Below are positions 1 to 64,000 of a DNA stretch of 64,000 nt, piece after piece. Source of the stretch: Malacoraja senta (taxonomy: Eukaryota); the NCBI GenBank assembly GCA_038087875.1, contig CM075978.1, positions 136,462,001 to 136,526,000 of the forward strand, written 5' to 3'. The position numbers and the translations under genes are program-made. Each line of letters starts with the position of its first letter. The first letter of the stretch is position 1. Below the pieces are notes generated by a model. The model had not been told where the DNA came from. It worked only from the letters and a program-made list of their open reading frames with translations, and searched no databases.

Positions 1-12
1 ATATTTTTCAAA

Positions 13-112
13 GACACAAAATGCTGGAGTAACTCAGCGGGTCTGGCAGTATCCCTGGAGAACATGGATAGTTGAAATTTCGACTTGGGGCCCTTCTATA
101 GACACTTCAGAC
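13..112 (-). mobile_element. Hammerhead-motif short retroelement (Penelope pLTR-like), degenerate copy
   Basis: GACACAAAATGCTGGAGTAACTCAGCGGGTC... is the reverse complement of the 4889-5001 copy. The ribozyme core is mutated. Confidence 0.75.
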
Positions 113-865: not shown

Positions 866-1058
866 GAAATCCCAAGTGCTGAAGGAAATCATGTGGGTCA
901 GGTCGCATCTGTGAAGGATGCTCAGAGCAATCTGAAGGTGGGTCCCGACATGAAACGTCACCTGTCCATTCTCTCCACAGATACTGCCTGACGTGCTGAG
1001 TTCCACCAGCATCTTGCGATTTGCACAAGATTCCAGCATTTGCCGTTCTTTGTGTCTT
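866..1058 (+). mobile_element. Hammerhead-motif short retroelement, older copy with a short inverted 5' arm
   Basis: CTGAAGGTGGGTCCCGACATGAAACGTCACC at 932-962, followed by the family body GATACTGCCTGACGTGCTGAGTTCCACCAGCAT. Confidence 0.7.
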
Positions 1059-1805
1059 CCTTTTAAAATTCCAACTGACTCACTAATATTCTCAACTGTC
1101 CTGTGCTTTAAGTGACTCCAACCCCATACCATTGTTGCCGACTCTTAACTGACCTGTGAAGTAACGTTGAAGTCATTCAGCAGTTTAGCATTTTTTCAGG
1201 ACAACTTTTGATGAGTAATGCGTGCTGATTCCGCCAGTGATACACACTTCCTAAGAACAAATGGGAATAAAAAAGAGTCTGGCAGAAGGTAGATGGGACT
1301 CATTGCAAAAATTCCCTTGACAAGTCTTGGAGGAGCCTGTAAATGGATGCACATTCTGTCGGCACAAGGAAGCTGTGCACTGTTCAAAAGAAGCCTCTAC
1401 AAATCCATGTGCCCCTGGCCGGGCTCGACAATCAAAGGATATTGAAGGGCTGGTAATATAAAGATTGCACAAACTCATTTGCAATTGTCAGATAAAATGA
1501 ATGAACTAAGTAGTATATTTGTATGGTCCATATAATAGAGCACTAAAATGAGAAATGTTGTTAAGTTAGAAAAGCAATCTGGTATTGCAGCTCATCATCA
1601 ACTTCTGGATTGACACCATGATGAGTTTCCATATCTTCACCAGACCTCTGGGTCAATCTGCTCATGCCAATAAATCCAGAATACTTGGGAGCCATCTCAA
1701 GCTATGCAGAAGAAGCTTACTTCTGAAAATGATTGCAGCATTGGTTTCCTGAAGTCACTCACCAAATCTATTTTGAAAGCAAGTTCAACTCATCAATTCA
1801 TCTGA

Positions 1806-2030
1806 AGATGATGAGGGGAAAGATTTAATCGGAATCTGAGGGGCAACTTTCTCACACAGAGGGTGGTGGGTAGAAATTATAACAACATTTATAAGACATT
1901 TAGACTGGTACATGGATAGGAAAGGTTTGGAGGGATATGGGCCAAATGCAGACAGGTGAAACTAGTGCAGACAGGGCAATGGGCAAACTGGGCCAAAGGA
2001 TCTGATTCCATGCTATATGACTCTATGACA
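1806..2030 (+). mobile_element. CR1-clade LINE 3' end
   Basis: Decayed ORF2 C-terminus (AGGGGCAACTTTCTCACACAGAGGGTGGTG = RGNFLTQRVV) and GACTCTATGAC tail. Confidence 0.8.
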
Positions 2031-2614
2031 CTTAATGGCTCTGTCAACTAAATTGCTTTCTCTCTTCATCCGCAATATGAAATCAGTCGGTTTTGGGAGA
2101 TAAACATCACTTATTTTAAGTTGCAATTATATTTGATGAATGGCTGCTCTTCTAGATGAAGACAGCTCTTATTGTGGCCATTACACATTGCCCTTTGAGG
2201 AGGTGCCCCTAATTTGTTTGTGTTCAGCAGGGTAAGGGTAAATAGATTTCAACATACACACACAAAGTGGTTCATTTAATACTTAAGAGTGCAATTATTT
2301 CAATTTACACCACTGATTAATTGTGAAACACAATGAATACCAATACAATAAACAAGCATGACATTCAAACCTTTAATCAAGTGGATGATCATTAGTCAAT
2401 TAATGTTATCAATTAATAAATAGTTAGTTGAGCACCTCTTCTCACACCATTAAACATCATCTGTTTGAGAATTTGGCTGTAGGGAGGATTTTCACTAATT
2501 ATAGTTTTACCAGATAAAAGGCCAGCAAAAATCTCACCTAAATCTAATGCAAACTGCCTAGAAATTCATCCCTGGTTGGTAGTGTTGCCTACCACGTCAG
2601 CATATCATACTATG

Positions 2615-2925
2615 TAGTAACAAGGAACTGCAGGTGCTGGTTAATATACAAAAGGATACAAAGTGTGAGAGCAACTCGGCAGGTCAGGCAGCATCTCTGG
2701 AGAACATGGATAGGTGATGTTTTGGCTCAAGATCCTTCTTCAGACTATTTGTGTGGGGTGGGGTGGGGTGGGGGGGAAGCTAGAAGAAGGGAGATGCAAG
2801 ACAAAGCTGTGGATGCAAGTGAGGGGGTTTTGATAAGCACATGATTGGAACAAAGGTCAGAGATAAAAGCAGAAGGCATGAGTCAGGATTGAAGAGTAAT
2901 GAATTGTGAAGCCAGAAGAAAGTAG
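2615..2925 (-). mobile_element. Hammerhead-motif retroelement with purine-rich (plus-strand) extension
   Basis: Family body at 2615-2746 ends ...CCTTCTTCAGACT. The following G/A-rich segment resembles 10945-11160. Confidence 0.72.
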
Positions 2926-4888
2926 GCACTATTCTTTCCAGTGAGTCAATCAAATGGAGACAGAGTGGAGTGAAGTCCCAGTTAAGAACATTGTTTTTAT
3001 TACTTTCCATGATCTTTGTTTAAATTTAAATGTAGTTTTACAGAAAAAGATAATAATGTACAAACAAATGACCTGTGTGAATTGACAAGCAGATCTTCAG
3101 GACTATTGCTTTCACAGAGGCAGAAGTCAGCTGTTCTCATCTCACCATCCATCAGTTCAATGAGCCTCTGATGATTGTGGTGATCTGCATGCATTTCTAT
3201 CCGCAGAGTCCTCTATTTTATGTTGTGCTGCAGAGATGAAACTTTTAACATCTTGTGCGAGTTCTTGCTGACTACACATTCATGCTGACTCTCCTATATT
3301 GAGAGTGGAATCTACTCATATGACCTGCCTCACCTTAATTGTACCTTTTGCCTCGGCCTTCTTCATCCCTTAGTTTGTAAATCAGCAGGAAAAAAAATGT
3401 TTACAAATGGGGGATTAGGGTAATGTGTTTATTGTCTCTCCTCAGACATTGAGAAGCTGTGTTTCTCGTAGCCCTGACAGAAACTGACAAAATGCATCAC
3501 ACTTGAGGCTGAAGAAATTCAAGTGTCCGGTGGCCCTAGGGCTCTAACCTGCAACCTCTAAATTCTTATCACTCGACCACTGGGTTGTTGTGGCCATTAT
3601 TCTCAATATGTCTTTCCCAATCAATATTTACTAATTCTGTTACTGCAAGGCTGTCCCATTAATGTATGGGTGGGAAGCATTGAACAGAAATGCACTTGTG
3701 GACTATTTATCTTCCTGTAAAGCTTGAACTCTAATGGTCCAAATGTAAAACATTTAATATTTCCAATAATTCTCGGCAAGGAACGGGCACATAAAAGTCA
3801 CAATGCTTAATATGTGGCCATCAACCTAACTTCTGGTTAACTTTATATTTTGGGGAGGGGTTGTTGGGAACGAGGCGAATGTATAAATCCTAAGTGGCTG
3901 TGGACACAGACACCATTAAAGCTAAAGTGAATTGGATAAAGAGCTGTACAAAATGATTATCCCAAGCTTATTCTGCTGTCACTATTCTGTTTAAATAGCA
4001 CTTTCAGAATTAACATAGAAATAGCCTTTGGAATGTTAATCTTCCAATATGATTCTTTATGAACTCAACATAGATTCAAAATGCTTCTTTTCATTACTTA
4101 CACAGCATTTCAGAAAATAAAAGAGTGGTCCATATTTTGTAGCATGTCTTTACTAGGTGTTGCCGCTATTATAAAATGCCAGTGTGCAAACAATTATTTG
4201 TTAATGCTTCCCTGAACCAAATGGAACTGCCATAGAGAGAAAAACTGTGCACAAGAGAAACAAAAAAAGGTTAGTGTGCATTGCCTCTACAACTTCAACT
4301 AATGGTACGAAACTTGTGCACAGACCTCTTTCCTGGGCAAAGGAACTAAGGTTGCAGTCAGACAGATCTCCAAACATGCCAGCTAGCCAAAATGAAAACA
4401 GTTGCCACTGATCTGATACGAGTGGCAGCAGTCTGATTTCAGTATTTAGGAGGCATGACTGTTCTGCTCATGAGATGATCGGTTCAACTAACAGTCTGTG
4501 GAGATAGCAATGTTGACAGTATAAATCCAATGCAGTGAGCTTGATGTAACCTTTGGCAGAATTTAGCCCAATCAAAATTTAAAAAAAAGAAGAAATACTT
4601 TAAAACTGACTACAGCAGCTATAATTGTGTAGGAAGCCTGAGTATCAGAAATTGTTCTTTCTGTTCACATATTTTGGCTGTATTGTACACTGTACACTGA
4701 CAACAGGGTGATTTGACAAAATCACTCCTTGACACAAACCTGTAAACTAACCTATTCCTCTTGGGTTAAAGTATAGCTAGCAAATCCTGCACATCATAGT
4801 CCATTAGAGAGCCAACTTTTATTCATAATGAAACAATTGTATTGAAAGTGGAATCTATTGTTGTGATGTTACTCAATATAACCTTATC

Positions 4889-5001
4889 TAGTCTTATCCA
4901 GACTTATGTCTGAAGAAGGGCCTCGACCTGAAACGTCACCCATTCCTTCTCTCCAGAGATGCTGCTGCCTGTCCCGCTGAGTTACTCCAGCATTTTGTGT
5001 C
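4889..5001 (+). mobile_element. Hammerhead-motif short retroelement with intact core and 12-bp TSD
   Basis: CTGAAGA AGGGCCTCGACCT GAAA CG TC at 4910-4937. TATAACCTTATC is duplicated at 4877-4888 and 5002-5013. Confidence 0.85.
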
Positions 5002-8000
5002 TATAACCTTATCCAAAGTACACCACCACAATGACACCATCTGGCATCTTTCTAGGATGGGTGACTGCAGAGGTAATGACAGAAGATGCTATATTTAGTC
5101 ATCACCAAGTTTAACAACATGTCTGCCCATGTTTGTGTCGGCTTTTTTTCTGTCACTTACACCTCCCTCAAAGTAAACTTAATAAAGCTAACCCTTCCTG
5201 CTCAGTTTATTTTCCAGAAAATTAACTAAGCTAATTAATGATTTAATCAAATTGAATCAAATTAAAAATTGTAAATTATATTTCAAAAGCCTGGAAAAAT
5301 TGACCATTTACAAAGAACAAATATCCCTTTCAAATACTAGAGAATGACCATGAAGTGCTTCTGATGATAATGAAAGCTGTCTAGCCCTCCTGCTTATCAA
5401 GGATTCACCAAAGAAAAAGTACACATTGTTAACATTAAATCCCTATAGGGGACCTGAAATAGCTTTCACTTAGCATTCCATTTTAATTGCTAGGCTGAAA
5501 TAATTCAAATCTGTTTTTTTGGCGTGCCACTAATTAAAACTGCAAGATTACACAGAGAAAAATAAATACATCATCTCTGCTTGAAAATGAAAGTTTTCTT
5601 GAATGACAAATATTTTTAATCAGAGCCATATGCACAGGAGCTTGGAGGGCGAGCTTAATCTCAAAACCACTCCAGCAGCATAAAACAATTCAGTGGGTTA
5701 TAATTAATGTCACAGTCATAACAGCAAGCTCAAGCCACTGTTTTTCTTTCTACTTAAGGAGAAATAACTAGCTGTTATCTCTGTGCCTGCAGAGCCTCCC
5801 CATTGTAGATTCAATAATACAAGAGGTTTCTTATCACCATTCGAGGTGAATGATTGTAACTGTGATATGTTTAGACAATGTGTTGTATTTAACCCAATTT
5901 ACAGGTGCCCCAGCTTGGCCACAGCAGTAAACACTGGGGACTAATAGGGAATTAAACATGTACAATAGACTAACTCCATTTACTCTCAAAACTGAAATGC
6001 ATTTAGTAAACTCACTTAAAGAGACAGTAGCCTCCTTCAGGGCATGTGCTGTCATTTGTTATTTTCATCATGGGGGAGGGTTGAATTTATCTTATCTGTT
6101 ACAGTGACCAAGATTGCAAGTGCAGCACTCCCCAAGTGCCGCAGTTTATTTCATTCTTCAAATTTGCCGATTCAAGCTGCTGTCTCTTTAATGCGCGTGG
6201 GCTGTTTATTCCACAAGTCCAGTAAAATAATCCGTGTAATTCACTTACATCTCACCGCTCAGGAGATTCCATGCAATTGCCACAACCTGAGCCAGGCATG
6301 ACGTCCATCACTTTGTCAAGAAATAACAATATCACTAATATTCTGAGAATCCCAACGGCTTGGTCACCACATTTGGCTTCTCTGGGATTTAAATAAAGAT
6401 TACAGAGGCCTTCAAAAATGCAGTTTCTAACACAGCAATATCACTGAGAGGAAAAAAAACCTGTACTGCCAGAGGAATCAAAGGAGACGATTTATGATTT
6501 CATTCCGATTGACGGCCGATTAAATTAAAACAGATCAGTGTTGCAATTCTTGGGCAGGTGGCTCTAGCCTGGTGACAGCCTCAGAACTATTAAATTGGTG
6601 CTGAGATGGAAAGCCTTCCGCTTACATTCACGCACTTACTGATCAAACTGTGACAAATGAGATGTTACTGCTCTTGTAAAGCAAGGCTACAATCTGTCAA
6701 ACCTGAACATAATTTGTGACCCTCAGTGACATCTTTTTTTTTCTCTTTCTTACTTTGAATGTGGGAACAGTTGCAGAATTCCCCAATACCACATGTTTTT
6801 TAATGCAGAGAGCTAAACCAGTACAAAATGCTAACGGGAACTCGAAACCATATATAACAATGTTGATAATTTGATCGTTCAGCGAAGTGGCATTCAATAA
6901 ATTATTATTTATCAGTAGAGCAGTCATCTAGCTGAAATTTCTAATCACCAGTAATTCTAGTGGGAGGGTCTCAATTTTCTTTAACAGCTGTCATCTTGCT
7001 CCATTCTGAAATGGAATTAGAGCACTTTAACACTTGAACCTTAAAGCAGTTCTTATTTCCTTAACTTTTCCTTGCAAGATTTTAAGTTGGTAATTCTGAC
7101 AATTTCTACCCAGGTAATACACGTAGAGGGCAGATACAAAAGAAATAGAAGTGCTGGGATTTAAATTCTAATAGCTGGATTTATTGTGCCAGATAAAAAC
7201 AAAATTGTACAGGACAAACCGTTGGTTCCAACTGCAGCTCGCATTTTATGTAAAATGGATAACGTAACATGCAGAGAAAAACTAGTAGGATACGGCATCC
7301 ATATTTGGCAAATGGTGCGGTAATGTGCACTAATCCAGTCTATCACGATGAACTTTTGAGGCAGCTTTTGAAATGCCCAGACATCAGGAGCTGTCATCGG
7401 TCTTTGTTCTTCTCTTAATGCAATAGGGGCCCTGGTCAATGCACTGAGAAAAGACCTGCACCCTGCTAACCTTGCCGATTAAAGGCAGGGTCTTAACAGC
7501 TGTCTAGAGTGCTGAGGTCACAAACACAGTTTGCTATGCCAACAACGACCACTCATCCCTGGTGAGTATGCCACAAGACTTGCGGTCAGGCTGATGTCAA
7601 GAGTGCATTGCAGGCATTTGCAGTTGTTAATACTTTAAGAGGAAAGGAAGACCTATTGTGCTAACAAGCTATTGTATTAAGAGATATAGCTTTTATTCTC
7701 GCAGCCTAACTAAATGGCGGTCATCATTATCATATTAACTCGCGACCCATTTGTCTGCTTTTCAGTTTCCTACTGTTACACTTAGTAAAACTATGTAAGG
7801 TTACTTAAGAAACTGGAATATGTTACAGTTGATTCTGAATAAAACAGGCATGCAATAACAAGCCACAAAAGCAAAGTTAAGTCTGCATATAATTCTCAGT
7901 AAAAATGGAAGAATATTATCTTTTCTTTTGCGGTGGTAAGCCAAATAAGGAGTTGAAGAGGAATATTGTGCCATCTTTGAAGAAAAGGCTTTTTGCATTG

Positions 8001-10853
8001 AAATGTTGTAGTTAGTTCAATGCAAGTCAAGAGTTATTGCCTCCTCGTTATTTTCCCAGAGGTAATTGGAGTATTGGTTTCAAACTATTCCTTGTTAAGA
8101 CCACCATTCAGAGATCGCCACATTCCATTTGTGACTTGTGACAACATTTTGACACTAGGAATGCAGAACTGGAGGTCTTAGCCATAGCTGTCACTTGTCT
8201 GTGTATGATTAATCTTATCTCTACACTTTAGCAACTCCCAAATATAGCCCAAATTAGACATTTAAACAGCTTGTGGGCTTAGGTGAATATTTTAGGCACT
8301 GATATGGCTGCTTCACTTTCACAAACCAGTTAAGACTTTCTGAGTGCCTTTATAAGAGTGCAAGTATGTAACATGTATATTTGTGTACAAGTTGAAAGTT
8401 AAAGAATATAAGCATACACCTGGTTTTGAAGTTATAAGATTTGTGATATCTTGGGATTCAGTTAAAGATGGAATACCGATGATACCATTTTAGCTTTTGA
8501 ACATTACCTCAGTTATATCGTGGATTTAAGATCACCCTTCATTATTAAATGATTGTCATACTTTAAATAGTAAATTGTCGATCATATAATAAAGACTAGT
8601 AATAGTTATTTGAGTCTTTTGGATTTTGTTATTTTGTTAATTGATGCTCCAACTGAATCAGTAATTTAACATTTTCAGTTTCTTTAATAGAATTTGATAT
8701 GAAAAACAAAACATGTTTTGTTAATTTAAATAATATGGAGATCTATATCTTGAAATTATTTGATGATTTGCTCAGAAGCTTTTGAATCTATTCTGACATT
8801 ATTAAATTGAAAAGAACTATTAATAAAGAACAGAATGTTCAATTGTACATCTAAACTCGGAATCAAATGCATTCATGAAATACAATTTAATGCACTGCTT
8901 TTGCCTATTGAAAAATAAAAATAAATAATTTTTCTTCAAGTTTCAGTTTCACAAAATGTGAATGCTTTGGCCCTTTGGAAATTATCAATATAAAAACAAT
9001 AGATTGTGTATGAATAAAGTCTATAACATTTGAAGGATATAATAGCCACGTGCCTAAAAATAAAAATATTGATATTAACAGGAGGGGAAATCTTGTAAGA
9101 TTAACAGGGAATCAATACAAATGGAATTCTAAGCTTTTATTTGCAATGCTATTCGGCTTCTGTTTGTCGTGGGTTCATGAACCAGAAACGACAATCTACA
9201 TAAATGTAAGTAAACAGGATGATGTGGGGAATCTTCTGTCCATTTGTCACCAAGATACATTCAGAATCTAATTGACTTTTATAATCTGGTAAATGGATAG
9301 TAACTACAACAATGACAACATTTGGTTCAAAATCTGTTGGCTGCAATACACTCTCTTTCTCTCTCACCAATTCCTTTCAAACTCCAAATTAAACAATTAA
9401 AGTGGTTGATTTAAGAATAAAAAATTATGCTTCTAGCCTTGGGTGAAAGCATTGATACTATCACAATCCAGATTTGAGCATTGGTCTACACTGGTTATGA
9501 TCAGTAACGAGAATTCCAAAAACTTGTTTTTAAATAGGTGGAAGTTTGGGCTGAATAAATTGCTTATTCTGCAAAAGATTAGTTGAGGAAATTTAAGAAC
9601 ATTAAAGTAATGGATCTATTTCAATAAAAGGAGGCATTCAAAGAAATGAGGAAATGGATTTAAACCCTGCGCAAGTTCAAAAGATAAATGTTCTAAGGAT
9701 ATAATCAACTTACTTCACATTTGACATGAAATATAAAAATATCTTTAGGCAGGGAAATAGCATGAGCGGATTAATTCTCCATTTCTGCATTCAAATGAGG
9801 ATCCTGTTTTGGAAGGCAGCCAGTCAGAAGCAGGTTTGCTTTTTATCTTTTGAAAAAAAAACTACTTGTGGAAAGCGTAGTACAGCTGGAAATATCTTGT
9901 GTCCCTTGCTAGTTCCTCCCTCGAGACCCTCCAAAGGGTATGAAAATATTCACCAACACTTACCCCTTAATTGTATTCAAGCTCCCAGAAGGCAACACTT
10001 GACAAAAATCACCATTAGCTCCTGACAGTACAACATGTTCAGGAAATGCTTACCTGATCAATAGAAAGTCCACGGGGACTTACTTTACAACTTTGGAATG
10101 GTATAAAAAATTCTTCCTTTTGTCCGATATGATAAAGTACGTGGTAGCATTTGTTGTTTTATTCTCCCTTTGTTTTTTTTTGTCTGCCAGAAATGCTAAA
10201 GGCCAGGAGCATATTACAGAAAGCTTTTGACAAATTAATAAGTAAATGTCAGTGAAAGAGAAGTGAAAAATGCACTTATTAAAAAACTTGTTTATATCTT
10301 GATTCCGGAGTTTTATTAAGTCAATCATCTTTCCGGCATCTTAATGAGGACAAAACAAATAGATTGACTTTAAATAGACAAAGTGAAGCATTAGATTGGA
10401 TTTCAGTCTGGAGGGAAAAAATCTGTATCGGGCTGGGCTGCTGTGAGATTATGATTTGCTCAACTAAGAATGGTTTTCTCAACTATTCCTGCAAAACTAT
10501 ACTAAAGAACTTCTTCAAGAGAAGTTCCCAGCCACAAGCAGTATGAGTGATAGGGTGGAGGGCAATCGGCTGGAAGCCTGGTTCAGAAGGTCATAGGCTG
10601 CGAGAGGAGGTTGGTGCATTGGGGACCGAGAGACTCTGTGGTGGGGGAATTTGTTCCAATCAATTGGAGAATCCAAGTCATGGGTAGAACTATATTTTGA
10701 GGTACCATGTGCTCGTCACAAGTAAGTGTGAATGATGGTTGGGGATTCTATTGTTGGCATTTGGGAGCTGGCCAGAGCTGAGGCTAAATGGCAGCTATGG
10801 GCTGAATTGTGCAGGCAGTTTGCTTAGTCGGAGATATGGTGCACTCAATTATA

Positions 10854-11344
10854 ACACAACATGCTGGTGAAACTCAGCGGGTCAGGCAATTTCTGTGGAT
10901 GGAATGGACAAGCAATGTTTTTGATCAGACACTTTCTTTAGACTGATAGTAGTTGGGGGGGAGAAACCTGGAACAGAGAGGTGGAGGCGGGACAAAGCCT
11001 GGCAGGTGGTAGAAGGATACAGGTGAGGGGGTTTCGTTTGGCACATGGTTGGAGTAAGTGATAAGAACTGGAGGTGAAAAGGAGACAATGGCTTTCAGAT
11101 AAGAAGAGTGAAATGTATAGTCAAAGGAAGGAAAATCTAGAACCAAAGGGGTGGAAATGGACTGGGAGGGGAGGGAAGAGAGGGGGTAAAAGGAAACTGA
11201 GGGACTCGGGGATGGAAAACTAGGTAGGAAGGAGGGGAAAGGAGCAGGATGACTGGGAGGGTGGGAGATAGACACATAATGCTGGAGTAACTCAGCGGGA
11301 CAGGTAGCATCTCTGAAGAGAATGAATGAGTGACGTTTTGGGTC
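10854..11344 (-). mobile_element. Two direct-orientation copies of the hammerhead-motif unit flanking a purine-rich spacer of about 320 bp
   Basis: Units at about 10854-10945 and 11268-11344 both begin ACACA..ATGCTGG..AACTCAGCGGG.CAGG. Confidence 0.75.
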
Positions 11345-12300
11345 TGTGCGTGCACCGGGCAGAGTTTGGAGGAAGGATGCACATTAGAAACATTCCTGCT
11401 CCTTCCAGTCAACAAAGGGGGCTGTAAAATTACTTCCTTCATGATTAAGTGACCACCACCCATTTTCAACTAACAGATTTTCAGTGCTGATGAGTTACAG
11501 GTCAGCCATTTGGGGGAATTCAGCCGCATGATGTGTGAGTGAATGGCATCATAAAACTTTATGGGGGGAAAAGATAATTATAAACGATAAAGTAAAGTTG
11601 ACCAAAAATATTGAACTGATACTCCTCACTCACGATATAATTCCCATACCTTGATATGCAAATCTGATAGCAGATTGTTCCAATTAGAATCTATCATGGC
11701 TGATGTTTTTTATCAAATTGTAGTAAGATTTTGGAGGTTGTGATTCATAGGAATTACTAAAGTATCGATTGAAATGCCTTTTTAGTGAAATAGAGTTTGT
11801 GCATGTTTGGTAATACAGTCTAAATGAAAAATGTAATCAAATATAGAGGTTTAACTTACACTAAGTTGAATCAGAATTTGTATTAATTCTTTAAAGTATG
11901 CTATCTGAATGACACCAGCTGCATTTTCAAATAAAGCTCACCACTTGCAGCGATGCATGTGACAGGGCCATAAAAAAGATCCAGCACCCAAACTGGCCAC
12001 AACAGTCCCGATTTTAACCAGGATGGATGGAATGTAAGGTGAGCACTACACTGTACTGATCTCAACAGCTTATACTACGTGACTTTATTTCCAAAATACC
12101 ATCTACATCTAAAAACAATGAAAAGAAGGATTTGCACAGGTCCTGTCTGGGGAGAAGTCTTGATCAACAGAGAAAGTGTGAAGAAAATATACTTATTTGG
12201 ACTATGGATCATCTCCCCATTGCCTTGACAGCAAAAAGCACAGCAGTTCCCCCAATTGGACCAGAGTTCACATTTTAGTCCAAGCTAACATAATCAAAGC

Positions 12301-18628: not shown

Positions 18629-18752
18629 ATAGAAGCTGACTGAAGCAAAGTTGTGCTAAAACTCTCTTGGTTTTATGTTTTACGTGGCTTTCTGTTTTGC
18701 TTTTTTTACAAATATTGCAAGGATACGTGATAGAATATGAAGGGGGCATTAC

Positions 18753-29077: not shown

Positions 29078-29089
29078 TTCCAATGCATT

Positions 29090-29264
29090 GTAGACAAACT
29101 GCTGGAGTAATGCAGCGGGTCAGGCAGCATCTCCGGAGGAAAAGGATAGGTGACGTTTCGGGTTGGGACATCACCGACCCTTTTCCTCCAGAAATGCTGC
29201 ATTACTCCAGCAGTTTGTGTCTATCTTTGGTATAAACCATCATCTGCAGGTCTTTGTTTCTACA
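29090..29264. mobile_element. Fold-back copy of the hammerhead-motif element with 12-bp TSD
   Basis: CAAACTGCTGGAGTAATGCAGC and GCTGCATTACTCCAGCAGTTTG are exact reverse complements. TTCCAATGCATT at 29078-29089 and 29265-29276. Confidence 0.85.
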
Positions 29265-45720: not shown

Positions 45721-47014
45721 GTGACTCTAAGCTTCTTTCCAGGGCACAATGAATTTACACAATGTTTCATGCCGCAACCAAGGCTCTGCCAACATGCACT
45801 TGTATTTAGAAAGTGGAGAGAATTAAAGGAAGCCCACTAGCATCAAATACTCAGCCTACCCTCAGAAGACACATTGCTGCCCAACTGTTATGAGCAACTG
45901 ATAAAATAATCTCCATGTGCATCAGGCAATGCAATTGTCACATAGCAAAAAAAAAGGTGACAGGTCTCAGGCACCCTACCATTTTGATATGTTAATAGCT
46001 CTTTGTGGACTGTGGGTGGTCTGCTTTTGATGCTATTAACAACTTCAACACTAAATCAAGTGACGGGTATGTTCAGGGGAATAGATTCAAAAACCTTCAC
46101 CCCATTTAAACCCTATGATAATACTAAAATAATAGGAAAAACAATCTACATATATTTAAGGTAAAAGTAATGTGCAACTTTCTTAATTTGACTCTATAGA
46201 GATATCCCCACAAATCATGATGATTTGATAAACCAGCACTATGGCACTGGAACTATAGAAGGCAGCAAAGGGATTTCAGAAATCGACTTGCTATTATTCT
46301 GTCTTGCATACCATGTTAATTTAATTTTAGGATTTTCATAAAAAAGTGATTTCTCAAACTGACCATGGAGTATTTGCAGGGTTAATGCAGTGCAATCCTC
46401 ACACTGCATTTGTATGCACTATATCAGTACACTATACATCACCTTTATAGATGCATCATTTAGCTTCTTTAAACTGGCAAAGTGAATTGTGGTTTCCCAT
46501 TTCATATCAGCTAATCATGAGACATAACTCTTTAACCACTACAATACATTTAATTCCGCACTCCATACGCGCTCCAAATAATGCATAGCATGCGAGTAAT
46601 TAAAAAAGTCAATTAATTAGGAATCAAGCAGAGTCCCAGCACCTTCTCTCCCAGGCCACATTTCACAGATCATTTTATTTGCGTGTCCCTGATCTAAACG
46701 TCTGTTGCAGTTGAAGATTTTGAAAGAGATGTTACTTCTGACACGTTATAGAAACATGTTTAAGATGGAAAGTGCAAGATTTCATTTACAGAGGGTAACC
46801 AAATCTTTCCGCTTCCTGTAATTTCCTTTGCTGCATTTCCATGAAATACTAAGAGTGCAAACTAAAAGTTTCTGTACCGTACTTCACCATCTGGATCTAG
46901 TTTTTTTAAATTCACGTTTACAAAATAACCTCACTCATAAGTAATATATAATTCAAATAAAATATGGAAATATACAAAGTTGTAAGCTTAAGTCAGAGGC
47001 ACTTTTTAAAATAT

Positions 47015-47214
47015 GTAGTAGGAAGGAACTGCAGATGCTGGTTTACACCGAAGATAGATACAAAATGCTCGAGTAACTCAGTGGGTCAGGCAGTATCTCT
47101 GGAGAAAATGAATAGGTGACGTTTCAGGTCGAGTCCCTTCTTCGGACTCGGGTCTCGACCAAAACATCACCAGAGCTGCTGAGCTGCCTGACCTGCTGGG
47201 TTACTCCAGCATTT
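47015..47214. mobile_element. Fold-back copy of the hammerhead-motif element
   Basis: Minus-strand unit 47015-47148 (core CCGAAGAAGGGACTCGACCTGAAACGTC) is joined to a plus-strand unit GGGTCTCGACCAAAACATCACC...TTACTCCAGCATTTT. Confidence 0.8.
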
Positions 47215-47828
47215 TCCTTTTAATATCTTTGTGATTATCTTCAGGGAGGTAGTGTTGGATTTGCCCCAGACCCCACCCAATGTTCTCAACCTTCTCATGT
47301 CTGAGCGGGCAACAAAACCATCATGATGATATTCTCCCCTTAATTACTGTACAAGTTGTAAACTCATTGTGATCCCCAATCCCACAGAAACCTATGTTTA
47401 CACTGTCCTCTACCCTGTTTACTGCCACACAACAGTCACAACCTATTTAAAGCTCACGAGACTGGATTTAAAATTATGAAGTTCTTTCTCAAATAGAGCA
47501 TAGATCAGATTTAACCGAATGGATAAAATCAGTTCAGACATTATTATCTCTTGGGACCAGAGGATAAAAATTACTGTAATGTTCAATTTAATTAAACTAA
47601 ATTTAAAAGATTTTATTAGTTGTACATATGTATATTTTGTTATTTTCTGGGAAGAGAAGCAATGGACAATCCTCAAATAATAATTCAATAGCAGATTAAA
47701 ACATACATCGGACACAATAACTGGTATTTCTATGGCATTTTGCATGTAAATACAACAATTTAAAAACTGTACTGTGCCCATGATAGGCAAATGGAATACA
47801 CCTTCTGCCCAACTCACTTAAACAACTG

Positions 47829-47988
47829 AAGAATATTTTGGGTCAGGACCAGTCCGCAAAAGGATCCTGAACCAAAACGTCACCTATCCATTTTCTCCAG
47901 GGATGCTGCCTGACCCGCTGAGTCACGCAGCATTTTAGGTCTAACTTCACCTTCGATTTTTCCAGCATCTACAGTTCTTTCTTAAACA
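47829..47988 (+). mobile_element. Hammerhead-motif element with 15-bp TSD
   Basis: Family body ends CTTAAACA. TCACTTAAACAACTG at 47814-47828 and 47989-48003. Confidence 0.82.
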
Positions 47989-48298
47989 TCACTTAAACAA
48001 CTGGTCAGTCACTAAGTACCCAGCTGAGTTGAAGAAAGCAGATAACACAGCAGTTAAGCTAATGACTGTAGTTATCAGAGCCGAAGAAGTTGAGATAGAA
48101 AGTGAGGGAAAAGTAATGTAAATCAGGTCAATTCAGCAGACTTGAAGTTAGTTTAGAACTAGAAATGTTGCACATTCAAGAAGTCTGCTCTACCATTCTC
48201 CAAACCCCTGCATGTAGTGTGGTGATGCTGGCAGGAGGGCTTGCCAGATCCACATTATCTAAATGTGGCCTGAATGTGGATGTACGGGGGCACTCTGT

Positions 48299-48401: not shown

Positions 48402-49821
48402 AATCATGATGCATTACAGTACAGCACTTGCAAATAAATGTGGTCTACTGAGATATGGTCCTTCTAATCCTTATCTAAATTGCAATTAACACTTCACAGC
48501 TACAGATATCTCCACAAAACCCAAGCTGTGTTCTGTTATATTGTTGTTATTGGACGAAAATCAAATCAATCTTCAAATAGGATTGGAATGAAAAAGGCTG
48601 ATCTCTAATTGCAAGAACAGATAACAATTTCATACTTTTTGCCCAAGTACAGCTATCAGGCTACAGGAGGAGCAAAAAAAAAGAAATTAGCCAGGAAACA
48701 TTGCCGCTGTATAGCATTTCATGATATTCCTCATCATATGCAAGATAACACAGGGCAAATATTTGAAAAAATAAACAAAGAGCCATAACGCTGAAAGAAA
48801 CAGAGCATTGTGTTTTGTGTGTATGTCTGCTTTCTTCAAATAATTTGTCACTCTAGATAGTCACAAAATGAAGTCACGAGGGCTTCATAAAAGAGTGTTT
48901 ATGAATTTCTTATCAAAATCTCTTGTGGCGCCATCCCAATTATCAGGTAAGAACAATCATATTAGAAAACACATTGGCTGTTTAATGTAATTTGCAATTG
49001 TTAAAAAAACAAATAGACGTACAGTAATTCTATTGCAATTAATCTCCAATCTAAACATGGCAGCACATAGAGGGAGAATAAAATACAGTCTGTGTTAACT
49101 GATGCAGGCCTCTTAATCTACCATTACTGAATGCGCTTATCATCTCTGCTACACTTAGCTAAGTTATTTCTTTGTCCAAACATTAAGGGGAAAAAAAATC
49201 AATTCAGCTCAGGTTTTCCCACATCTTCATATCACTTCTCATCTGAACTCTATGGAGGTAGAATTTCAATTACCTTGGAGAACTCCCAGCGAGCCTGGAT
49301 GAACACGGTCCTCCTGGTCACAGCCAGTAATTGTAGAGGGGTCTGCATCTTACATTTGATGATATGGCTTACAAAAATAGATATTCTTCGTTACTTGATA
49401 ACAGTATAGGCCTTCATAGGAACATTGCCACTATTTCTCTGCTCCATCAGGCAGCACATAAACAACTAATTCTGTTACTTTGTAAACGTAATAATTAACA
49501 TATATACAATGTGAAAAAAAAATACTGACTTTAATTGTAGCGGCAAAAAGGTTCCCTGGGGAGGATAAATGAACTTTGAATATTCACTATTTGGTTGAAA
49601 AAATAATTAGCTTGGTATCTCATTCTCCCCTGTCCCAATGAGATCGTTATTTAAAAAAAAAACATTTTCCTTCATTACAAAATATGAAAATGATACTGAA
49701 TTCATTTAGAAACAATCTCCAAATCTTTCGTTACGGTAATGTTCAGCACATTTGTTGCATGGAACAAGCAACAACAGCAAATACAAAATACAACTTACAA
49801 TATATGTAAGTGCATTTTGTT

Positions 49822-50136
49822 GACACAAGAGACGGCAGATGCGGGAATCCTGAGCGCAAAACAAAATGCTGGAGGAACAGAGTGTGTCACGCAGTATCTA
49901 TGGAGGGAAATGGACAGGTGACATTTCAGGCCAGGACCCTACCCCATGCTGAAACCCCACCTGTCCATTTCCCTCCACAGATGTTGCCTAACCAGTTGAG
50001 TTCCTAATCCTCCTATTCCTTCGCTCCATAGATGCTGCCTCACCCGCTGAGTTTCTCCAGCATTTTTATCTACCTTCGATTTTTCCAGCATCTGCAGTTC
50101 CTTCTTAAACAGTTGAGTTCCTCTAGTGTTTTGCTT
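49822..50136. mobile_element. Older fold-back copy with a younger family member (50006-50109) nested inside
   Basis: Arms GGAGGGAAATGGACAGGTG / CACCTGTCCATTTCCCTCC. The insert is flanked by CAGTTGAGTTCCT at 49993-50005 and 50110-50122. Confidence 0.82.
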
Positions 50137-52803: not shown

Positions 52804-53799
52804 AAGCAAAAATGCTTTCACGTTTAGAAGAAAGTATATATTAAAAATATAGTTTTGATATTTCACTTATTATATATGGCTATAACAGTGGTGAATTTGT
52901 GATCAATGGTTGGAGGCAGAATATGTTTTTCACTCAGATGGAAGTCGGTAAAGAGATATGCAGAATGTGAAATTGGGTGGGTGTGGACAAGACAACATAT
53001 AACACCCATTAATGGAAGGAAGGAATACAGAAGAAAATACAATAGTTTCCGACTTGGATCACCTTGTATATATTTATTGAAGAAATCAATTAACCTTTTC
53101 AACTTCTTTGGATGTATTAAATGACAATCTTTTCACAGTTGTAATGTGAGGCGGAAAGAAGGAAAGCAGAAAAGAAAGTTTTATTAAGTCACCTGGTACA
53201 AAATAAAAATCAATTTTTAGGTAGCTTTAATGTAGTCACTGACATTTTAAGTGGTTTCAAATGGCAGCTTACTTCATTCTGATACAACTGCATGTTTTTT
53301 TTCCTATGGCCTTGTACTCATTACTATATGTACAAGGCCATTACTATATGTTCAAAGGCCCCACTTGTCTGACAATACAAATCTATGTAAGGTGGCAACA
53401 GCCAATAATAGAGTTGACCAATTCTCCACTGTGCTTACATTCCTGAAGTAAGAAAATCTAAATTATGTGTGAAATTAGATATGAAGATAATAGAGTGCAG
53501 ATTTTAACTTTCAACACAAAATAGAACCGTTGTAACTTTGAACATCTAAAAATCTGTTTTGAGGAATTTTACTATACACTGCATACAAATGCACAGAATA
53601 CAGATATAACTCTCCCAAGGATATGCTGGAGTCTATAAATATAGAACACTCATTTATGGATCAATGCTATTGATGGTGATGCAACTTCACATTGATTACT
53701 TAAAATGTACAGCACAGAAAAACACTCTGCCCCACTGGTTCATTGCCCCATTCCCATCCTTCCTCACCTACCTCTATCACAGTTTCAAAATAAAAGAGA

Positions 53800-54225
53800 A
53801 AATGCAGATGCTGGATATCGGAATTATAAAGAAAAAATGCTAGAAGAATAGCTCAGCCAGTCCGGCGGCATCTGTGGAAAGAGAAACTGACTTTTCAGGT
53901 TTGGGATTCTTCATCAGGACTGGAAAGGAGAGAAAACAAGTTTGTTTTCAATGGCAGAGAGGGTTCGGCAGTTTTGGAGGAACGGGGTGGGAGGGGGTGG
54001 GCAGCGAGAACAAAGAGAATATCTTTGATATAATAAGAACTAAATTAGGTCATTGATCACTCTATCAGAGATATTCCCTTTGTTCTCACCATTCCTCCCC
54101 CATCTCCTCTGCTAGTGAAAACTAACATGCTTTGCCTCCTTCCCAGTTCCGATGACGAGCCCCAGATTTGAAATGTGTTTTTTCTCACATAGGCTACATG
54201 GCCTGCTCAGTGTTTGTTGTTTTCT
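53800..54225. mobile_element. Old, diverged fold-back relative of the hammerhead-motif element with a longer spacer
   Basis: TGCAGATGCTGG head. Minus-strand CTGATGAAG...CCTGAAAAGTC at 53889-53917. Decayed plus-strand CCGATGACG...TGAAATGT at 54149-54176. Confidence 0.6.
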
Positions 54226-60353: not shown

Positions 60354-60535
60354 GTAAGAAGGAACTGCAGATGCTGGTTTAAACCGAAGATGGACACAAA
60401 AAGCTGGAGTAACTCTGCGGGACAGGCAGCATTTCTGGAGAGAATGGGTGACGTTTCGGGTCAAGACCATTCTGAAGAATGACCCTTCTGATGCTGCCTG
60501 TCCCGCTGAGTTACTCCAGCTTTTTGTGTCTATCT
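60354..60535. mobile_element. Fold-back copy of the hammerhead-motif element with 17-bp TSD (1 mismatch)
   Basis: Inverted arms of about 46 bp (AAGATGGACACAAAAAGCTGGAGTAACTC...GCAGCAT). TATGTTTA(C/A)ATATCTGT at 60337-60353 and 60536-60552. Confidence 0.85.
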
Positions 60536-62091
60536 TATGTTTAAATATCTGTTGTGCTGGCTGCAAGTAAGAATTTTATTGTTCCGTTTCAGGACATATG
60601 TCTGTCTGTAAAACACCCTCGACTTGATCTTAAATTTATATATCATTGTTTTCGATATTAGAAGAAAATAAGCATTCCCGTGTGTGTTTCATTGGTGTGA
60701 AGAACTGACATTCCTGTGAAAACTGATAAATAGAGCTCTGTTGTCAGTAAGTGCAAAATGCAGTTAGGAATATGATTTGTGTCTGCCAGTTGTTCTTCGG
60801 ATACAACCAAAAGCTTTAATTTGAGATCTCTGACCTGGGTCAACTAAAAATACACAAACTCTTAAACACTTTAAAGACCAAAGTCTGGAAATAACATAGT
60901 TAAGCTATGTTGTCTTCTGTTGAAGCTATTTAATACTCAAAACATAAGATTCATTTTGGACTTAAAATTGGATATTTTTGGAATTTATTATTTAAGCCTA
61001 TAATCAGAACAACCGTAAGGTCTGCTCTGACCTATGGCTCTCCACTATAAAGCAGGAGTAAGCAGAGTTTAAAGACTTCTTAACCGTTCTGGTGCTGATA
61101 TGTGAAAGCTATTCATAAGTTACTGACAGTCATAGGCTCTGATTGGAAATCAACATGAATTGGAGTCGAAGTTGAAATGAAGCAATCAATTATTATTGGA
61201 TTAAGTTTGTATGCTAGAAATTGAATTTCGCCCTTTATTGGTGCACTAAACACGTGCTGTTTACGGTGCTACTCCTCAACTAGATCACCTGCAAAAATAC
61301 CCGATAACGGCCAAGGGAAATAGTGCCTCGCTAGTTTGCACCCGGAATTAATGCATTAAATCAGGATCTGCACAGGACCTTATTTCCTATTTAGTGCAAA
61401 AGAAAACAGAGTAGGGGCTCATCCCTTAAAGGCACATGCCCCTTCACAGCCTTAAACTGCAACACATGCAAGGCAGCTCTGGTGAAGGGTGAGGCTGCAG
61501 GCAAAAGGGAGAGCTTGGTGATATTCACGTTAGGCTTTGGTGGCTGTGAGAAGAAGGGGGTCCCGGACATGAGATATATCAGGGGTCAACATTAAAGAAT
61601 GTGGCAGAAGGTGGTTACAGTATTCTCCAGAACAACAAAATCCATAGACCAGATCTCGAGGAAACTTGATTATCTCTCAATTCATATCATGGTAATGTTC
61701 AGTCTAACAGAAATGCTGCTCATTCATTCTCACAAAGGTATGAGCAGATAAGGTTAGAGGGATGCAGGACACAAGAAGATAAACCAGGCACCAGTGACTA
61801 CAGTCTGTCGCATGGTGCAGGGAATCTGATATCAGCACTCATACTGGAGAGAGGTATGTGTATTCATCCTACCTGAACGGATTCAGGTGAGGTTCATGAT
61901 TGGGATGCTTTAATGACAAAGCTGATGCACAAGTACGGGTGGAAATGGTCAGTGATCTGACAGTTGTCCTGGCCTCATGCAAGAGGCGTTAAGAACCTGG
62001 AGGACAGAGTTTTCAATTTCTCACAGAGGATTCTGCATTGCCAAGAGACCATGTCCTTCACTCTGGACCCAATAACCTCCACTTTTTTAAA

Positions 62092-62403
62092 ACACAAAGT
62101 GATGGAGTCCAAAGAAGGGTCCCTAACTGAAATGTAGAATCAAGGAATTGCAATGCTGATATACACAAAAGGACAGAAAGTGCCGGAGTAACTCAGCAGA
62201 TCAGGCAGCACCTCTAGACAACATCTTGGGAGTATTTTATGTCCTTTTCTGTATTCATGTTTTTCATCAGCTGAGTTATTCCAGCACTTTGTGTCCTTTC
62301 CAGACCTGAAAAGTTGTTTGTCCATGTTCTCTGAAAATGCTGCCTGACTCACTGGGTTACTCCAACACTGTTACTCATCATTCCAGCATCTGCAGCTCCT
62401 TGT
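62092..62403. mobile_element. Scrambled cluster of hammerhead-element fragments in both orientations
   Basis: Pieces GGAGTAACTCAGCAGATCAGGCAGCA, GCTGAGTTATTCCAGCACTTTGTGTC, ATGCTGCCTGAC and TTCCAGCATCTGCAG. Confidence 0.65.
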
Positions 62404-62767
62404 CCATGCACACTTCTTTGTTGGGTATCAATACAATCATGTTGTACAATGCCATGCAGAGATGAAAGCCACACACAATTTGGCTGATTCTATGCAGTCT
62501 CACTCTGATCCATTAGAGGTCTGGTCCCAGACACCCAGAAGCATCTTGACACTCAATAAGACACCAACGAGCTGCTTGATGACTTCATTGAGCAAAGAGA
62601 TGCCAGGAGTAAGCAGATTGCAGCATCAAAGATCAGAAGGTCGTTACCTGTGAGCAGCTTACAGTTCCACAGGAGCGAAAGGATGCTGCACATGAACAGC
62701 TAGTTCTCTTGAAAGAGCAGAGAGATACTATGCAGAAGTAGCACAGACTCCTTCCGGAAACAGACAT

Positions 62768-63359: not shown

Positions 63360-63580
63360 AAAACTGCAGATGCTGGAAACCAAAAAATTTAAGAAAAAAC
63401 AGAAAATCCTAAAAACATTCAGCAGTTTAGGCTGCATCAGTGGAAGAGAGACAATGTTAATGTTCCTGGTGAACGACCCTTCGTCAGAACAAGGGTGAGG
63501 AAGGATTTTATTCCTGAAACATTACCTTTATTATTTCTTCCCACAGATGTGGCCTGACCTGCTGAGTATTTCCAGCATTT
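63360..63580. mobile_element. Old fold-back hammerhead-element relative, abutting a CR1 tail
   Basis: AACTGCAGATGCTGGA head, minus-strand CTGACGAAGGGTC, and plus-strand CCTGACCTGCTGAGTATTTCCAGCATTTT. Confidence 0.65.
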
Positions 63581-64000
63581 TAGACAATAGACAATAGACA
63601 ATAGGTGCAGGAGTAGGCCATTCGGCCCTTCGAGCCAGCACCGCCATTCAATGTGATCATGGCTGATCATCCCCAATCAGTACCCCGTTCCTGCCTTCTC
63701 TCCATATCCCATGACTCCGCTATCTTTAAGAGCCCTATCTAGCTCTCTCTTGAAAGTATCCAGAGAACCTCTGGAACTTCAGAATTCTCTGCCTCCACTG
63801 CCCTCTGAGGCAGAGAATTCCACAGACTCACAACTCTCTGTGAGAAAAAGTGTTTCCTCGTCTGCGTTCTAAATAGCTTACCCCTTCTTCTTAAACTGTG
63901 GCCTCTGGTTCTGGACTCTACCAACATCGGGAACATGTTTCCTGCATCTATCGTGTTCAAACCCTTAATAAACTTATATGTTTCAATAAGATGCCCTCTC
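63581..64000 (-). mobile_element. CR1-clade LINE 3' end, continuing past the window edge
   Basis: ORF 63739..63960 (ESRTRGHSL...FFSQRVVSLWNSLPQRAVEA) and (TAGACAA)3 tail. Confidence 0.93.

What the first reader, a model, noticed from the sequence alone, without database searches (positions are those of the whole stretch)
4889..5001. Dispersed short retroelement family carrying a minimal type I hammerhead ribozyme (about 13 loci in 64 kb)
Seen: 4910-4937 reads CUGAAGA-AGG[GCCUCGA]CCU-GAAA-CG-UC. This is the full hammerhead core (CUGANGA...GAAA...UH) with a short stem II. The flanks GU(4908-09) and AC(4938-39) start helix I, and helix III is reduced to the palindrome ACGU. The motif, variably decayed, marks related units near 70-100, 932, 2713, 10915, 11330, 29149, 47114, 47853, 49917, 53889, 60447, 62117 and 63460, giving the rough consensus GTCTGAAGAAGGGTCTCGACCCGAAACGTCACC. 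The units have no tRNA head, no poly(A) or microsatellite tail and no ORF. Established: Penelope-like element pseudo-LTRs and metazoan retrozymes carry minimal type I hammerheads whose palindromic helix III lets two copies cleave as a dimer. Inference: this is a very high-copy, non-autonomous Penelope-derived or retrozyme family in a chondrichthyan. It could be a source of self-cleaving or circular RNAs and is easily mistaken for a plain SINE. I cannot tell whether it has already been catalogued.
Basis: partly seen in the sequence, partly recalled or inferred. Interest (0 to 1): 0.85.

Follow-up and report, generated by a model that had tools for sequence, protein, structure and literature searches.

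The report
Penelope-type short repeat with hammerhead motif
A 100-160-base jumping-gene fragment, found in well over 100,000 pieces of this animal's genome, carries a mostly decayed 'hammerhead' self-cutting RNA motif and the insertion scars typical of Penelope-like retroelements; this is a known kind of element, here in an unusually abundant family.

Summary
Positions 4910-4937 carry every hammerhead core base in type I order. I found about 16 loci (24 arms), 3.9% of the window.

Laid reads put the family in more than 150,000 contig pieces in the source species and in a relative.

The family shows three insertion marks described for Penelope-like elements:
- two alternative 3' ends about 40 nt apart (the optional "tail");
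- head-to-head inverted copies inside a single duplication;
- rare partial tandems.

The motif also has three hallmarks of Penelope minimal hammerheads: an extra base before stem II, G10.1-C11.1, and the palindrome ACGU with no loop 3.

Not supported:
- No RT or GIY-YIG ORF lies in the window.
- Helix I has only 2 bp.
- The copies show no covariation.
- Only 1 of about 16 loci keeps both an intact core and a stem II.
- A competing hairpin is about 7 kcal/mol more stable.
- PolyA RNA reads show no pile of ends at the cut site and no circle-type joints.

Verdict: a new, very abundant member of a known kind. The same family was noted by first-stage readers in many other windows of this genome.

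The parts
4889..5001 (+). The finding: a 113-nt tail-less copy of the unit. 4889-4907 is a copy-specific 5' extra piece whose reverse complement weakly matches the unit's own first 11 nt. Family-wide homology starts at 4908.
   Evidence: (depth jumps at 4908)
4877..4888 (.). Left copy of the 12-bp target-site duplication TATAACCTTATC
   Evidence: 12/12 identical to 5002-5013
5002..5013 (.). Right copy of the 12-bp target-site duplication
4910..4937 (+). Minimal type I hammerhead motif. CUGAAGA is 4910-4916 and the extra A is 4917. Stem II pairs 4918-4921 with 4926-4929, and loop CUCG is 4922-4925. GAAA is 4930-4933, C15.2-G16.2 is 4934-4935 and U16.1-C17 is 4936-4937. The predicted cut lies after 4937. 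This copy has C at 4921 and U at 4929, where the family majority has U and C.
10..109 (-). Decayed copy (core CUAUAGA)
867..1062 (+). Fold-back. The primary copy 892-1062 (+) carries the tail. A short inverted arm lies at 867-917.
2609..2876 (-). Long-form copy: the unit plus tail, with at least 130 nt of shared C/T-rich upstream sequence ending in YAG just before the hammerhead box
10807..11115 (-). Long-form copy, with upstream body shared with 2776-2876. With 11265-11344 it forms a same-strand pair about 420 nt apart.
11265..11344 (-). 5'-truncated copy that starts inside stem II
29090..29264 (.). Fold-back insertion inside one 12-bp duplication (29078-29089 and 29265-29276). The minus arm is tail-less and the plus arm has the tail. 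The arms share a 23-nt stretch, 100% complementary, that contains private variants.
47010..47224 (.). Fold-back. The primary minus copy 47010-47163 has the tail and the core CCGAAGA. A short plus arm runs to 47224.
47829..47989 (+). Single 161-nt copy with tail between perfect 14-bp duplications. Its first 24 nt are a small inverted copy of its own stem II region.
49814..50005 (.). Old fold-back (arms 75% complementary)
50006..50109 (+). Nested 104-nt copy, 5'-truncated inside the hammerhead, with tail. It lies between 13-bp duplications and is inserted into the arm of the previous fold-back.
53799..53917 (-). Older subfamily copy with core CUGAUGA (N7 = U) and decayed stem II
60354..60536 (.). 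Fold-back insertion inside one 16-bp duplication (15/16 identical). The minus arm has the tail and the plus arm ends at the tail-less site. Arms are 93% complementary over 55 nt.
62105..62412 (.). Cluster of decayed arms on both strands
63361..63582 (.). Old fold-back. The minus arm has the core CUGACGA (N7 = C).

Best explanation
The unit is the 3'-terminal non-coding module of a Penelope-like retroelement. Penelope enzymes supplied in trans copied it to enormous numbers, either as extremely short (5'-truncated or short-transcript) copies or as a non-autonomous derivative.

Shown:
- Insertions are flanked by 12-16-bp target duplications.
- cDNA ends at one of two sites about 40 nt apart: tail-less just after GTGTCTA, or tail-bearing after the CCAGCATCTGCAG...ACAT extension.
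- About 40% of loci carry a second, inverted copy head-to-head inside the same duplication. One arm has the tail and the other does not, and young pairs share private variants.
- Most copies begin within a few bases of the hammerhead box. A minority continue about 110-175 nt further upstream.

Inferred:
- A GIY-YIG/RT protein nicks both DNA strands and primes at two internal RNA sites, as shown in vitro for the Anolis Poseidon element.
- The hammerhead motif is inherited from the Penelope terminal repeat. It could cleave after GUC (4937) only when two motifs pair through the palindrome ACGU, as in tandem or dimeric RNA.
- In the solitary, decayed genomic copies it is inert.
For: Motif:
- The strict descriptor hits only here; chance is about 2e-5 per repeat consensus.
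- The genome-wide majority has U at 4921 (88-91%) and C at 4929 (64-74%). This gives stem II GGGU/ACCC with G10.1-C11.1, an unpaired A before it, and C15.2-G16.2 with no loop. PMC4209133 lists these three features as emergent hallmarks of Penelope minimal hammerheads.
- The one free core position, N7, is A, U or C in different subfamilies.

Architecture:
- Target duplications are verified.
- The tail-less copy at 4889-5001 and the tail-less secondary arms contrast with tail-bearing primary arms. The loose-end consensus behind 5004 is the tail.
- Fold-backs lie inside one duplication, with arms 93-100% alike.
- Fold-back and head-to-tail joints recur in DNA contigs of two species.
- PMC8557442 and PMC11167929 describe the tail, the adjacent inverted 5'-truncated copies, the partial tandems, and extension of both strands from two internal RT start sites as Penelope signatures.

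Abundance: 160,531 and 148,244 contig pieces were laid in two species.
Against: - None of the 30 ORFs of 80 aa or more that I tested in the window has an RT or GIY-YIG domain. The link to an autonomous Penelope element was therefore not tested; only unchecked first-stage notes from other windows claim it.
- Helix I is 2 bp.
- Rfam hammerhead models give nothing, even at E up to 10.
- Stem I and stem II show no covariation in 12 or 8 copies.
- The monomer's minimum-energy fold (-19.9 kcal/mol) pairs the CUGAAGAAGG box with a downstream CCUUCU..CAG stretch. It beats the hammerhead-compatible fold (-12.6 kcal/mol).
- PolyA RNA raw reads of a related species show equal strands and no position where read ends reach a fifth of the depth.
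Confidence: 0.78

Rival explanations
1. It is an active animal (non-LTR) retrozyme. Tandem units would be transcribed, the hammerheads would cut as dimers, and unit-length RNAs would circularise and serve as templates.
For: - Head-to-tail joints 5000-5004 to 4908-4911 stand in 13-19 DNA contigs per species.
- A same-strand pair lies about 420 nt apart at 10807-11344, and joints show the same composite elsewhere.
- A 2026 preprint reports retrozymes in one chondrichthyan and derives them from Penelope terminal repeats.
Against: - Units in the window are solitary or inverted, not tandem.
- Tandem joints are tens among about 1.5e5 pieces.
- No tail-less head-to-tail joint was seen in RNA reads. 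The one back-joint seen in RNA also stands in DNA contigs.
- There is no pile of read ends at the cut site.
- Insert ends do not coincide with the cut site. Copies run from 4908 to 5004, not from 4938 round to 4937.
Confidence: 0.1
2. It is an ordinary LINE-dependent SINE or LINE 3' fragment, for example a partner of the LINE whose 3' ends lie at 29050-29077, 56311 and 63590. On this view the hammerhead-like string is a coincidence.
For: - The last 23 nt of the tail-less unit match that LINE's 3' end at 17/23. For copy 4891 only 1-5 of 300 shuffles reach this score.
- Two of the three LINE 3' ends in the window abut a unit end.
Against: - The similarity is not significant for four other copies.
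- There is no terminal microsatellite and no Pol III head.
- Tail-less copies with perfect duplications need internal priming.
- Fold-back arms duplicate the same region, unlike twin-priming inversions.
- A strict hammerhead match has a chance of about 2e-5 per consensus, and it carries three extra Penelope-type hallmarks.
Confidence: 0.07
3. The box is a true Penelope hammerhead relic but is no longer kept for catalysis. The CUGAAGAAGG box would persist because it is one strand of a hairpin with the downstream CCUUCU..CAG stretch, and because it abuts the transcript's 5' end (the consensus TCAGTCT resembles an initiator).
For: - The alternative hairpin is the minimum-energy fold, by about 7 kcal/mol, and is also the RNAalifold consensus.
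- It has 84% of cells paired and 4 pairs with compensatory changes; only 7-15 of 500 shuffles reach this. The hammerhead helices have none.
- The sharp family-wide 5' border at 4908 has TCA just upstream in the loose-end consensus.
Against: - The hairpin was derived from the same 8-copy alignment it was scored on, so it is biased.
- The compensatory changes are single decayed copies.
- Core bases are slightly better kept (0.88) than non-core motif bases (0.78).
- Alternative inactive folds are normal for natural hammerheads.
Confidence: 0.3

Closest known systems
Minimal hammerheads of metazoan Penelope-like elements (Cervera and de la Pena 2014, PMC4209133; Lunse, Weinberg and Breaker, RNA Biol, cited in PMC6765202)
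   Same: - Type I order.
- No loop 3, with a palindromic 15.2-16.2.
- An unpaired base before stem II.
- G10.1-C11.1.
- Mostly dispersed single motifs, read as truncated elements, with some close pairs on opposite strands.
   Different: - Stem II is only 4 bp, against 6-8 bp in the described families.
- Helix I is 2 bp, as in the D. virilis variant.
- The copy number in one genome is far above the 2,000-9,000 per genome quoted there.
Poseidon element of Anolis carolinensis, PAc (Frangieh et al. 2024, PMC11167929)
   Same: - Two alternative 3' ends separated by a 30-40-nt 'tail'.
- A hammerhead about 65-105 nt upstream of the insertion's 3' end.
- No RNA-seq read ends at the predicted cut site.
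   Different: - In PAc the ORF start overlaps the ribozyme. Here no ORF runs through the unit.
- The enzyme partner is not identified here.
Animal non-LTR retrozymes (Cervera and de la Pena 2020, PMC7229834; Li, Clavereau and Pollet 2026 preprint)
   Same: Short non-coding units with a type I hammerhead, derived from Penelope terminal repeats. Tandem joints do exist in the genome.
   Different: Here the overwhelming majority are solitary or inverted insertions with target duplications. No circular RNA evidence was found.
Schistosome Sm-alpha / Sj-alpha SINE-like elements with hammerheads
   Same: A high-copy short retroposon carrying a hammerhead.
   Different: Those have a Pol III promoter head and canonical, active ribozymes. 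Here there is no Pol III head and only a minimal motif.

Membership tests
Hammerhead ribozyme, type I | Core bases C3 U4 G5 A6 N7 G8 A9 ... G12 A13 A14 ... A15.1-U16.1, H17 in type I order | tested here: met
   The core is intact at 4910-4937 and in the family majority sequence. Most other window copies carry core mismatches or are truncated.
Hammerhead ribozyme, type I | Stem II closed by G10.1-C11.1 | tested here: met
   The majority letters are U4921 and C4929. This copy has G-U and a C-A mismatch.
Hammerhead ribozyme, type I | Helix I of several base pairs joining the 5' and 3' flanks | tested here: not met
   Only G4908-C4939 and U4909-A4938 pair; the next positions mismatch. Family homology stops 2-5 nt upstream of C3.
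Hammerhead ribozyme, type I | Match to curated covariance models (Rfam Hammerhead families) | tested here: not met
   No hit at gathering score on the window. No hit at E up to 10 on 4850-5050.
Hammerhead ribozyme, type I | Covariation in the helices | tested here: not met
   There are 0 compensatory pairs in stem II. Paired cells equal the shuffled controls. The copies are neutrally decaying, so the test is weak.
Hammerhead ribozyme, type I | Site-specific self-cleavage 3' of H17 | tested here: inconclusive
   PolyA raw reads of a relative show no pile of ends at 4937/4938 at the threshold of a fifth of depth.
Penelope-type minimal hammerhead | No loop 3, with palindromic 15.2-16.2 that allows a dimeric helix III | tested here: met
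   GAAA-CG-UC, giving the palindrome ACGU.
Penelope-type minimal hammerhead | Unpaired nucleotide between A9 and G10.1 | tested here: met
   A4917, with no variant at 5% or more among laid reads.
Penelope-type minimal hammerhead | Lies in the terminal repeat of an element encoding RT plus GIY-YIG endonuclease | not testable with these tools
   No such ORF lies in the window. Scans of other collections were empty.
Penelope-like element insertion | Optional 30-40-bp tail present at one end only | tested here: met
   Tail-less end at 5001, with duplications. Tail-bearing ends at 47989, 29264 and 60354. Secondary arms are tail-less.
Penelope-like element insertion | Inverted 5'-truncated copy adjoining the 5' end | tested here: met
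   Seven of about 16 loci, two of them inside verified duplications. Recurrent opposite-strand joints appear in DNA contigs.
Penelope-like element insertion | Partial tandems (pseudo-LTR arrangement) | tested here: inconclusive
   Rare head-to-tail joints. One same-strand pair at 10807-11344, with the composite seen in about 10 other contigs.
Animal non-LTR retrozyme | Tandem arrays of hammerhead units giving circular RNAs | tested here: not met
   Window units are solitary or inverted. RNA reads have no tail-less head-to-tail joints. Circles were not directly assayable.
tRNA-, 5S- or 7SL-derived SINE | Pol III head and A-rich or microsatellite tail | tested here: not met
   No tRNA gene, no Rfam hit, and the 3' ends are ...GTGTCTA or ...CTACAT.

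The most novel reading that the evidence does not exclude
The true master may be a promoter-bearing mini-Penelope of about 280 nt: unit, tail and a ~110-nt C/T-rich body, working only in tandem. The >1e5 short copies would then be full-length cDNAs of transcripts that start at an initiator-like TCAGTCT abutting the hammerhead. On this reading the CUGAAGAAGG box has three roles: transcript start, one strand of a switch hairpin, and ribozyme core. The hairpin-versus-hammerhead choice would decide whether an RNA is cut or copied.
Probability: 0.12. Interest if true: 0.55.

Novelty: new member of a known kind. Interest (0 to 1): 0.3.

Why it matters
Why Penelope-like elements keep hammerheads is still unsettled. 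In vitro the ribozyme is dispensable for insertion, and whole clades lack it.

A family with more than 1e5 copies offers a large natural data set. It has several subfamilies, a discrete 5' border at the ribozyme box, and both tail-less and tail-bearing ends. One could ask whether master copies are selected for the ribozyme core, for a competing hairpin, or for neither.

For annotation, the family makes up about 4% of this window. It would be mislabelled as a plain SINE, and its fold-backs can break assemblies.

Tried and rejected
- **Rfam:** the search at gathering score on the window and at E up to 10 on the locus gave no hammerhead.
- **Public contig collections:** exact-pattern scans of metagenome and prokaryotic genome contigs, for the motif and for the conserved 3' domain, found nothing.
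- **Protein database:** I searched with the antisense ORF over the long-form copy, hoping to reach other loci of the family. No candidates came back, so no further copies and no Penelope ORF could be fetched.
- **Pfam:** 30 ORFs of 80 aa or more gave only a zf-C4 nuclear-receptor exon.
- **Covariation of hammerhead helices:** none was found.
- **Excess conservation of the core:** it is slight, 0.88 against 0.78-0.83. In the laid reads it is confounded by clipping at alignment ends.
- **SINE/LINE tail sharing with the neighbouring LINE:** significant for one copy only.
- **Literature search for the sequence strings:** it found only unrelated primers.
- **Lunse et al. paper:** it is not held in the library.
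- **DNA-transposon/MITE reading:** rejected. Single arms have their own target duplications, the duplications vary from 12 to 16 bp, and the arms are asymmetric.

Full report
**The motif**

Positions 4908-4940 read GU CUGAAGA A GGGC CUCG ACCU GAAA CG UC ACC. All invariant hammerhead bases are present in type I order. I wrote a strict descriptor: CUGANGA, an optional extra base, a stem II of at least 3 bp, GAAA, a Watson-Crick 15.2/16.2 pair, then U and H. It hits the window once, here. In 192 million strand-bases of composition-matched random sequence it occurred 11 times. That is about 0.007 expected per window and 2e-5 per 170-nt repeat consensus. Rfam's hammerhead models do not see it, even at E up to 10. 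Those models expect a helix III hairpin and a longer helix I.

**The family in the window**

A profile built from eight copies finds 24 arms in about 16 loci on both strands, 2,506 bases or 3.9% of the window.

Five insertions have clean target-site duplications:

| Insert | Duplication | Form |
|---|---|---|
| 47829-47989 | 14 bp | single copy with tail |
| 50006-50109 | 13 bp | nested copy with tail |
| 29090-29264 | 12 bp | fold-back |
| 60354-60536 | 16 bp, 15/16 identical | fold-back |

There is no tRNA gene, no Rfam family and no A-rich or microsatellite tail. None of the 30 ORFs of 80 aa or more that I tested has a Pfam domain, except a nuclear-receptor zinc-finger exon at 18709-19152.

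**Two alternative 3' ends**

Copies end in one of two ways. Some end just after GTGTCTA, as at 5001. Others end about 40 nt further on, after an extension containing CCAGCATCTGCAG and closing in ...CTACAT.

- In fold-backs, the arm that abuts one duplication carries the extension and the other arm does not (29090-29264, 60354-60536).
- Genome-wide, the loose-end consensus just behind 5004 is this extension: 3,074 RNA reads with agreement 0.6.

This matches the optional 30-40-bp 'tail' described as unique to Penelope-like elements. In vitro it is explained by two internal start sites for reverse transcription (PMC8557442, PMC11167929).

**Fold-backs**

Seven loci are head-to-head inverted pairs.

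- The two youngest lie inside a single duplication.
- Their arms are 93-100% complementary, well above the 70-85% typical between copies. The 29-kb pair shares private variants.
- Both arms cover the same region of the unit, which does not fit L1-type twin priming.
- It does fit the inverted 5'-truncated partner copy typical of Penelope insertions, and the finding that the Anolis Poseidon protein cleaves and extends both DNA strands.
- The single copies 47829-47989 and, weakly, 4889-5001 start with a short inverted copy of their own 5' region.

**Genome-wide view from public reads**

I laid 4860-5030 against four runs at 80% likeness.

- *Abundance.* It collected 160,531 contig pieces from the source species and 148,244 from a relative that shares about 55% of 31-mers with this region.
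- *5' border.* Depth rises by four orders of magnitude at 4908. The loose ends before 4908 agree only on the last three bases (TCA). Most copies therefore begin 2-5 nt upstream of C3.
- *Majority sequence.* The majority letter is U at 4921 (88-91%) and C at 4929 (64-74%). It has stem II GGGU/ACCC, a G10.1-C11.1 pair, an unpaired A before the stem, and C15.2-G16.2 with no loop. Cervera and de la Pena list exactly these three as features that emerged in Penelope minimal hammerheads without being part of their search descriptor.
- *Variation.* The most variable motif positions are the loop and the CpG sites (4924/25, 4929/30, 4934/35). That is the pattern of neutral decay.

**The long form**

Two copies, at 2609-2876 and 10807-11115, share about 130-220 nt of C/T-rich sequence upstream of the box, ending in YAG.

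- Laying 10780-11400 shows this body is repeated at roughly 0.3-13% of the depth of the core.
- About ten DNA contigs join 11088 directly to 11224-11234. A composite of unit, tail-like stretch, ~110-nt body and unit therefore exists elsewhere.
- Rare direct head-to-tail joints (5000-5004 to 4908-4911) also stand in 13-19 contigs per species.

So tandem, pseudo-LTR-like arrangements exist but are a small minority.

**Is the ribozyme likely to work?**

The evidence here is negative or neutral.

- *Helix I.* It has only two pairs, although the D. virilis Penelope variant also has 2 bp.
- *Intact copies.* In the window two copies keep all 12 core bases (4910 and 53917). The second has lost stem II.
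- *Covariation.* The hammerhead helices show none: 68-75% of cells paired, no better than shuffles, and no compensatory change in stem II.
- *Core conservation.* Core bases are slightly better kept (0.88) than non-core motif bases (0.78) and the rest of the unit (0.83). The free position N7 is A, U or C in different subfamilies. This is modest support for constraint on master copies.
- *A competing fold.* The predicted minimum-energy fold of the majority monomer is -19.9 kcal/mol. It pairs the CUGAAGAAGG box with a downstream CCUUCU..CAG stretch. The best hammerhead-compatible fold is -12.6 kcal/mol. RNAalifold chooses the same hairpin. It has 84% of cells paired and four pairs with compensatory changes, reached by only 7-15 of 500 shuffles. 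It was derived from the same eight sequences, so this is a lead and not proof.
- *RNA reads.* In polyA RNA raw reads of the relative, 0.21% of reads carry the unit and both strands are equal. No position shows read starts or ends at a fifth of the depth. The only back-joint seen in RNA also stands in DNA contigs. Frangieh et al. report the same absence of cut-site ends for Poseidon.

**What could not be done**

- The window holds no RT or GIY-YIG ORF.
- Routes to other loci failed: pattern scans and a protein search with an antisense ORF.
- The physical link to an autonomous Penelope element therefore rests on architecture alone, plus unchecked first-stage notes from other windows of this genome.
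- 'Chondrichthyan' cannot be verified with these tools. The only taxonomic evidence is a chordate-type nuclear-receptor exon.

**Verdict**

The best reading is a very abundant, short, Penelope-mobilised family that carries a dimer-type minimal hammerhead, inert in nearly all genomic copies.

This phenomenon is already published. Dispersed single minimal hammerheads have been read as truncated Penelope elements (PMC4209133), and animal retrozymes as Penelope derivatives, including one chondrichthyan (2026 preprint). I therefore rate it a new member of a known kind.

Its noteworthy points are the copy number, the discrete 5' border at the ribozyme box, and the competing hairpin.

Noticed in passing
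window 18709-19152 (-): An ORF carries a C4 nuclear-receptor zinc-finger (Pfam zf-C4, E 2.7e-15). The window therefore lies in or near a chordate nuclear-receptor gene.
   Followed up: partly
window 4910-4956 and homologous positions in other copies: A competing hairpin pairs the hammerhead box CUGAAGAAGG with a downstream CCUUCU..CAG stretch. It is the minimum-energy fold and shows four compensatory pairs in eight copies. It would hold the ribozyme core inactive.
   Followed up: partly
window 4904-4910; long forms 2744-2800 (-) and 10942-11000 (-): The family's 5' border has the consensus TCA|GTCTGAAG, which resembles an initiator (TCAGTCT). In long-form copies a C/T-rich tract ending in YAG comes just before it, like a 3' splice site. 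In D. virilis Penelope the intron is reported to end at helix I.
   Followed up: no
window 56311-56480, 63590-64000 (sense on -), 29050-29077 (+): A second repeat family has a 3' end carrying TATTGTC repeats (probably a LINE 3' end). Two of its three 3' ends abut an end of the hammerhead unit. Target sites of several unit insertions resemble the unit's own 3' end (CTATCTT), which suggests microhomology at priming.
   Followed up: partly
window 10807-11344 (-): Two units lie on the same strand about 420 nt apart. The stretch 11089-11223 between them is locus-specific, and other contigs join 11088 to about 11224-11234. The common composite therefore has a period near 280 nt.
   Followed up: partly
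window ~24100-24250 (-): The translation contains a Tc1/mariner-like transposase stretch (…GGGGVMAWACM…LIFIDD…), a DNA-transposon remnant.
   Followed up: no
window 53799-53917 (-) and 63361-63488 (-): Older, divergent subfamilies keep the CUGANGA box with N7 = U or C. The copy at 63488 could form a 4-bp helix I (GUU/AAC plus U-A), where the main family has 2 bp.
   Followed up: no
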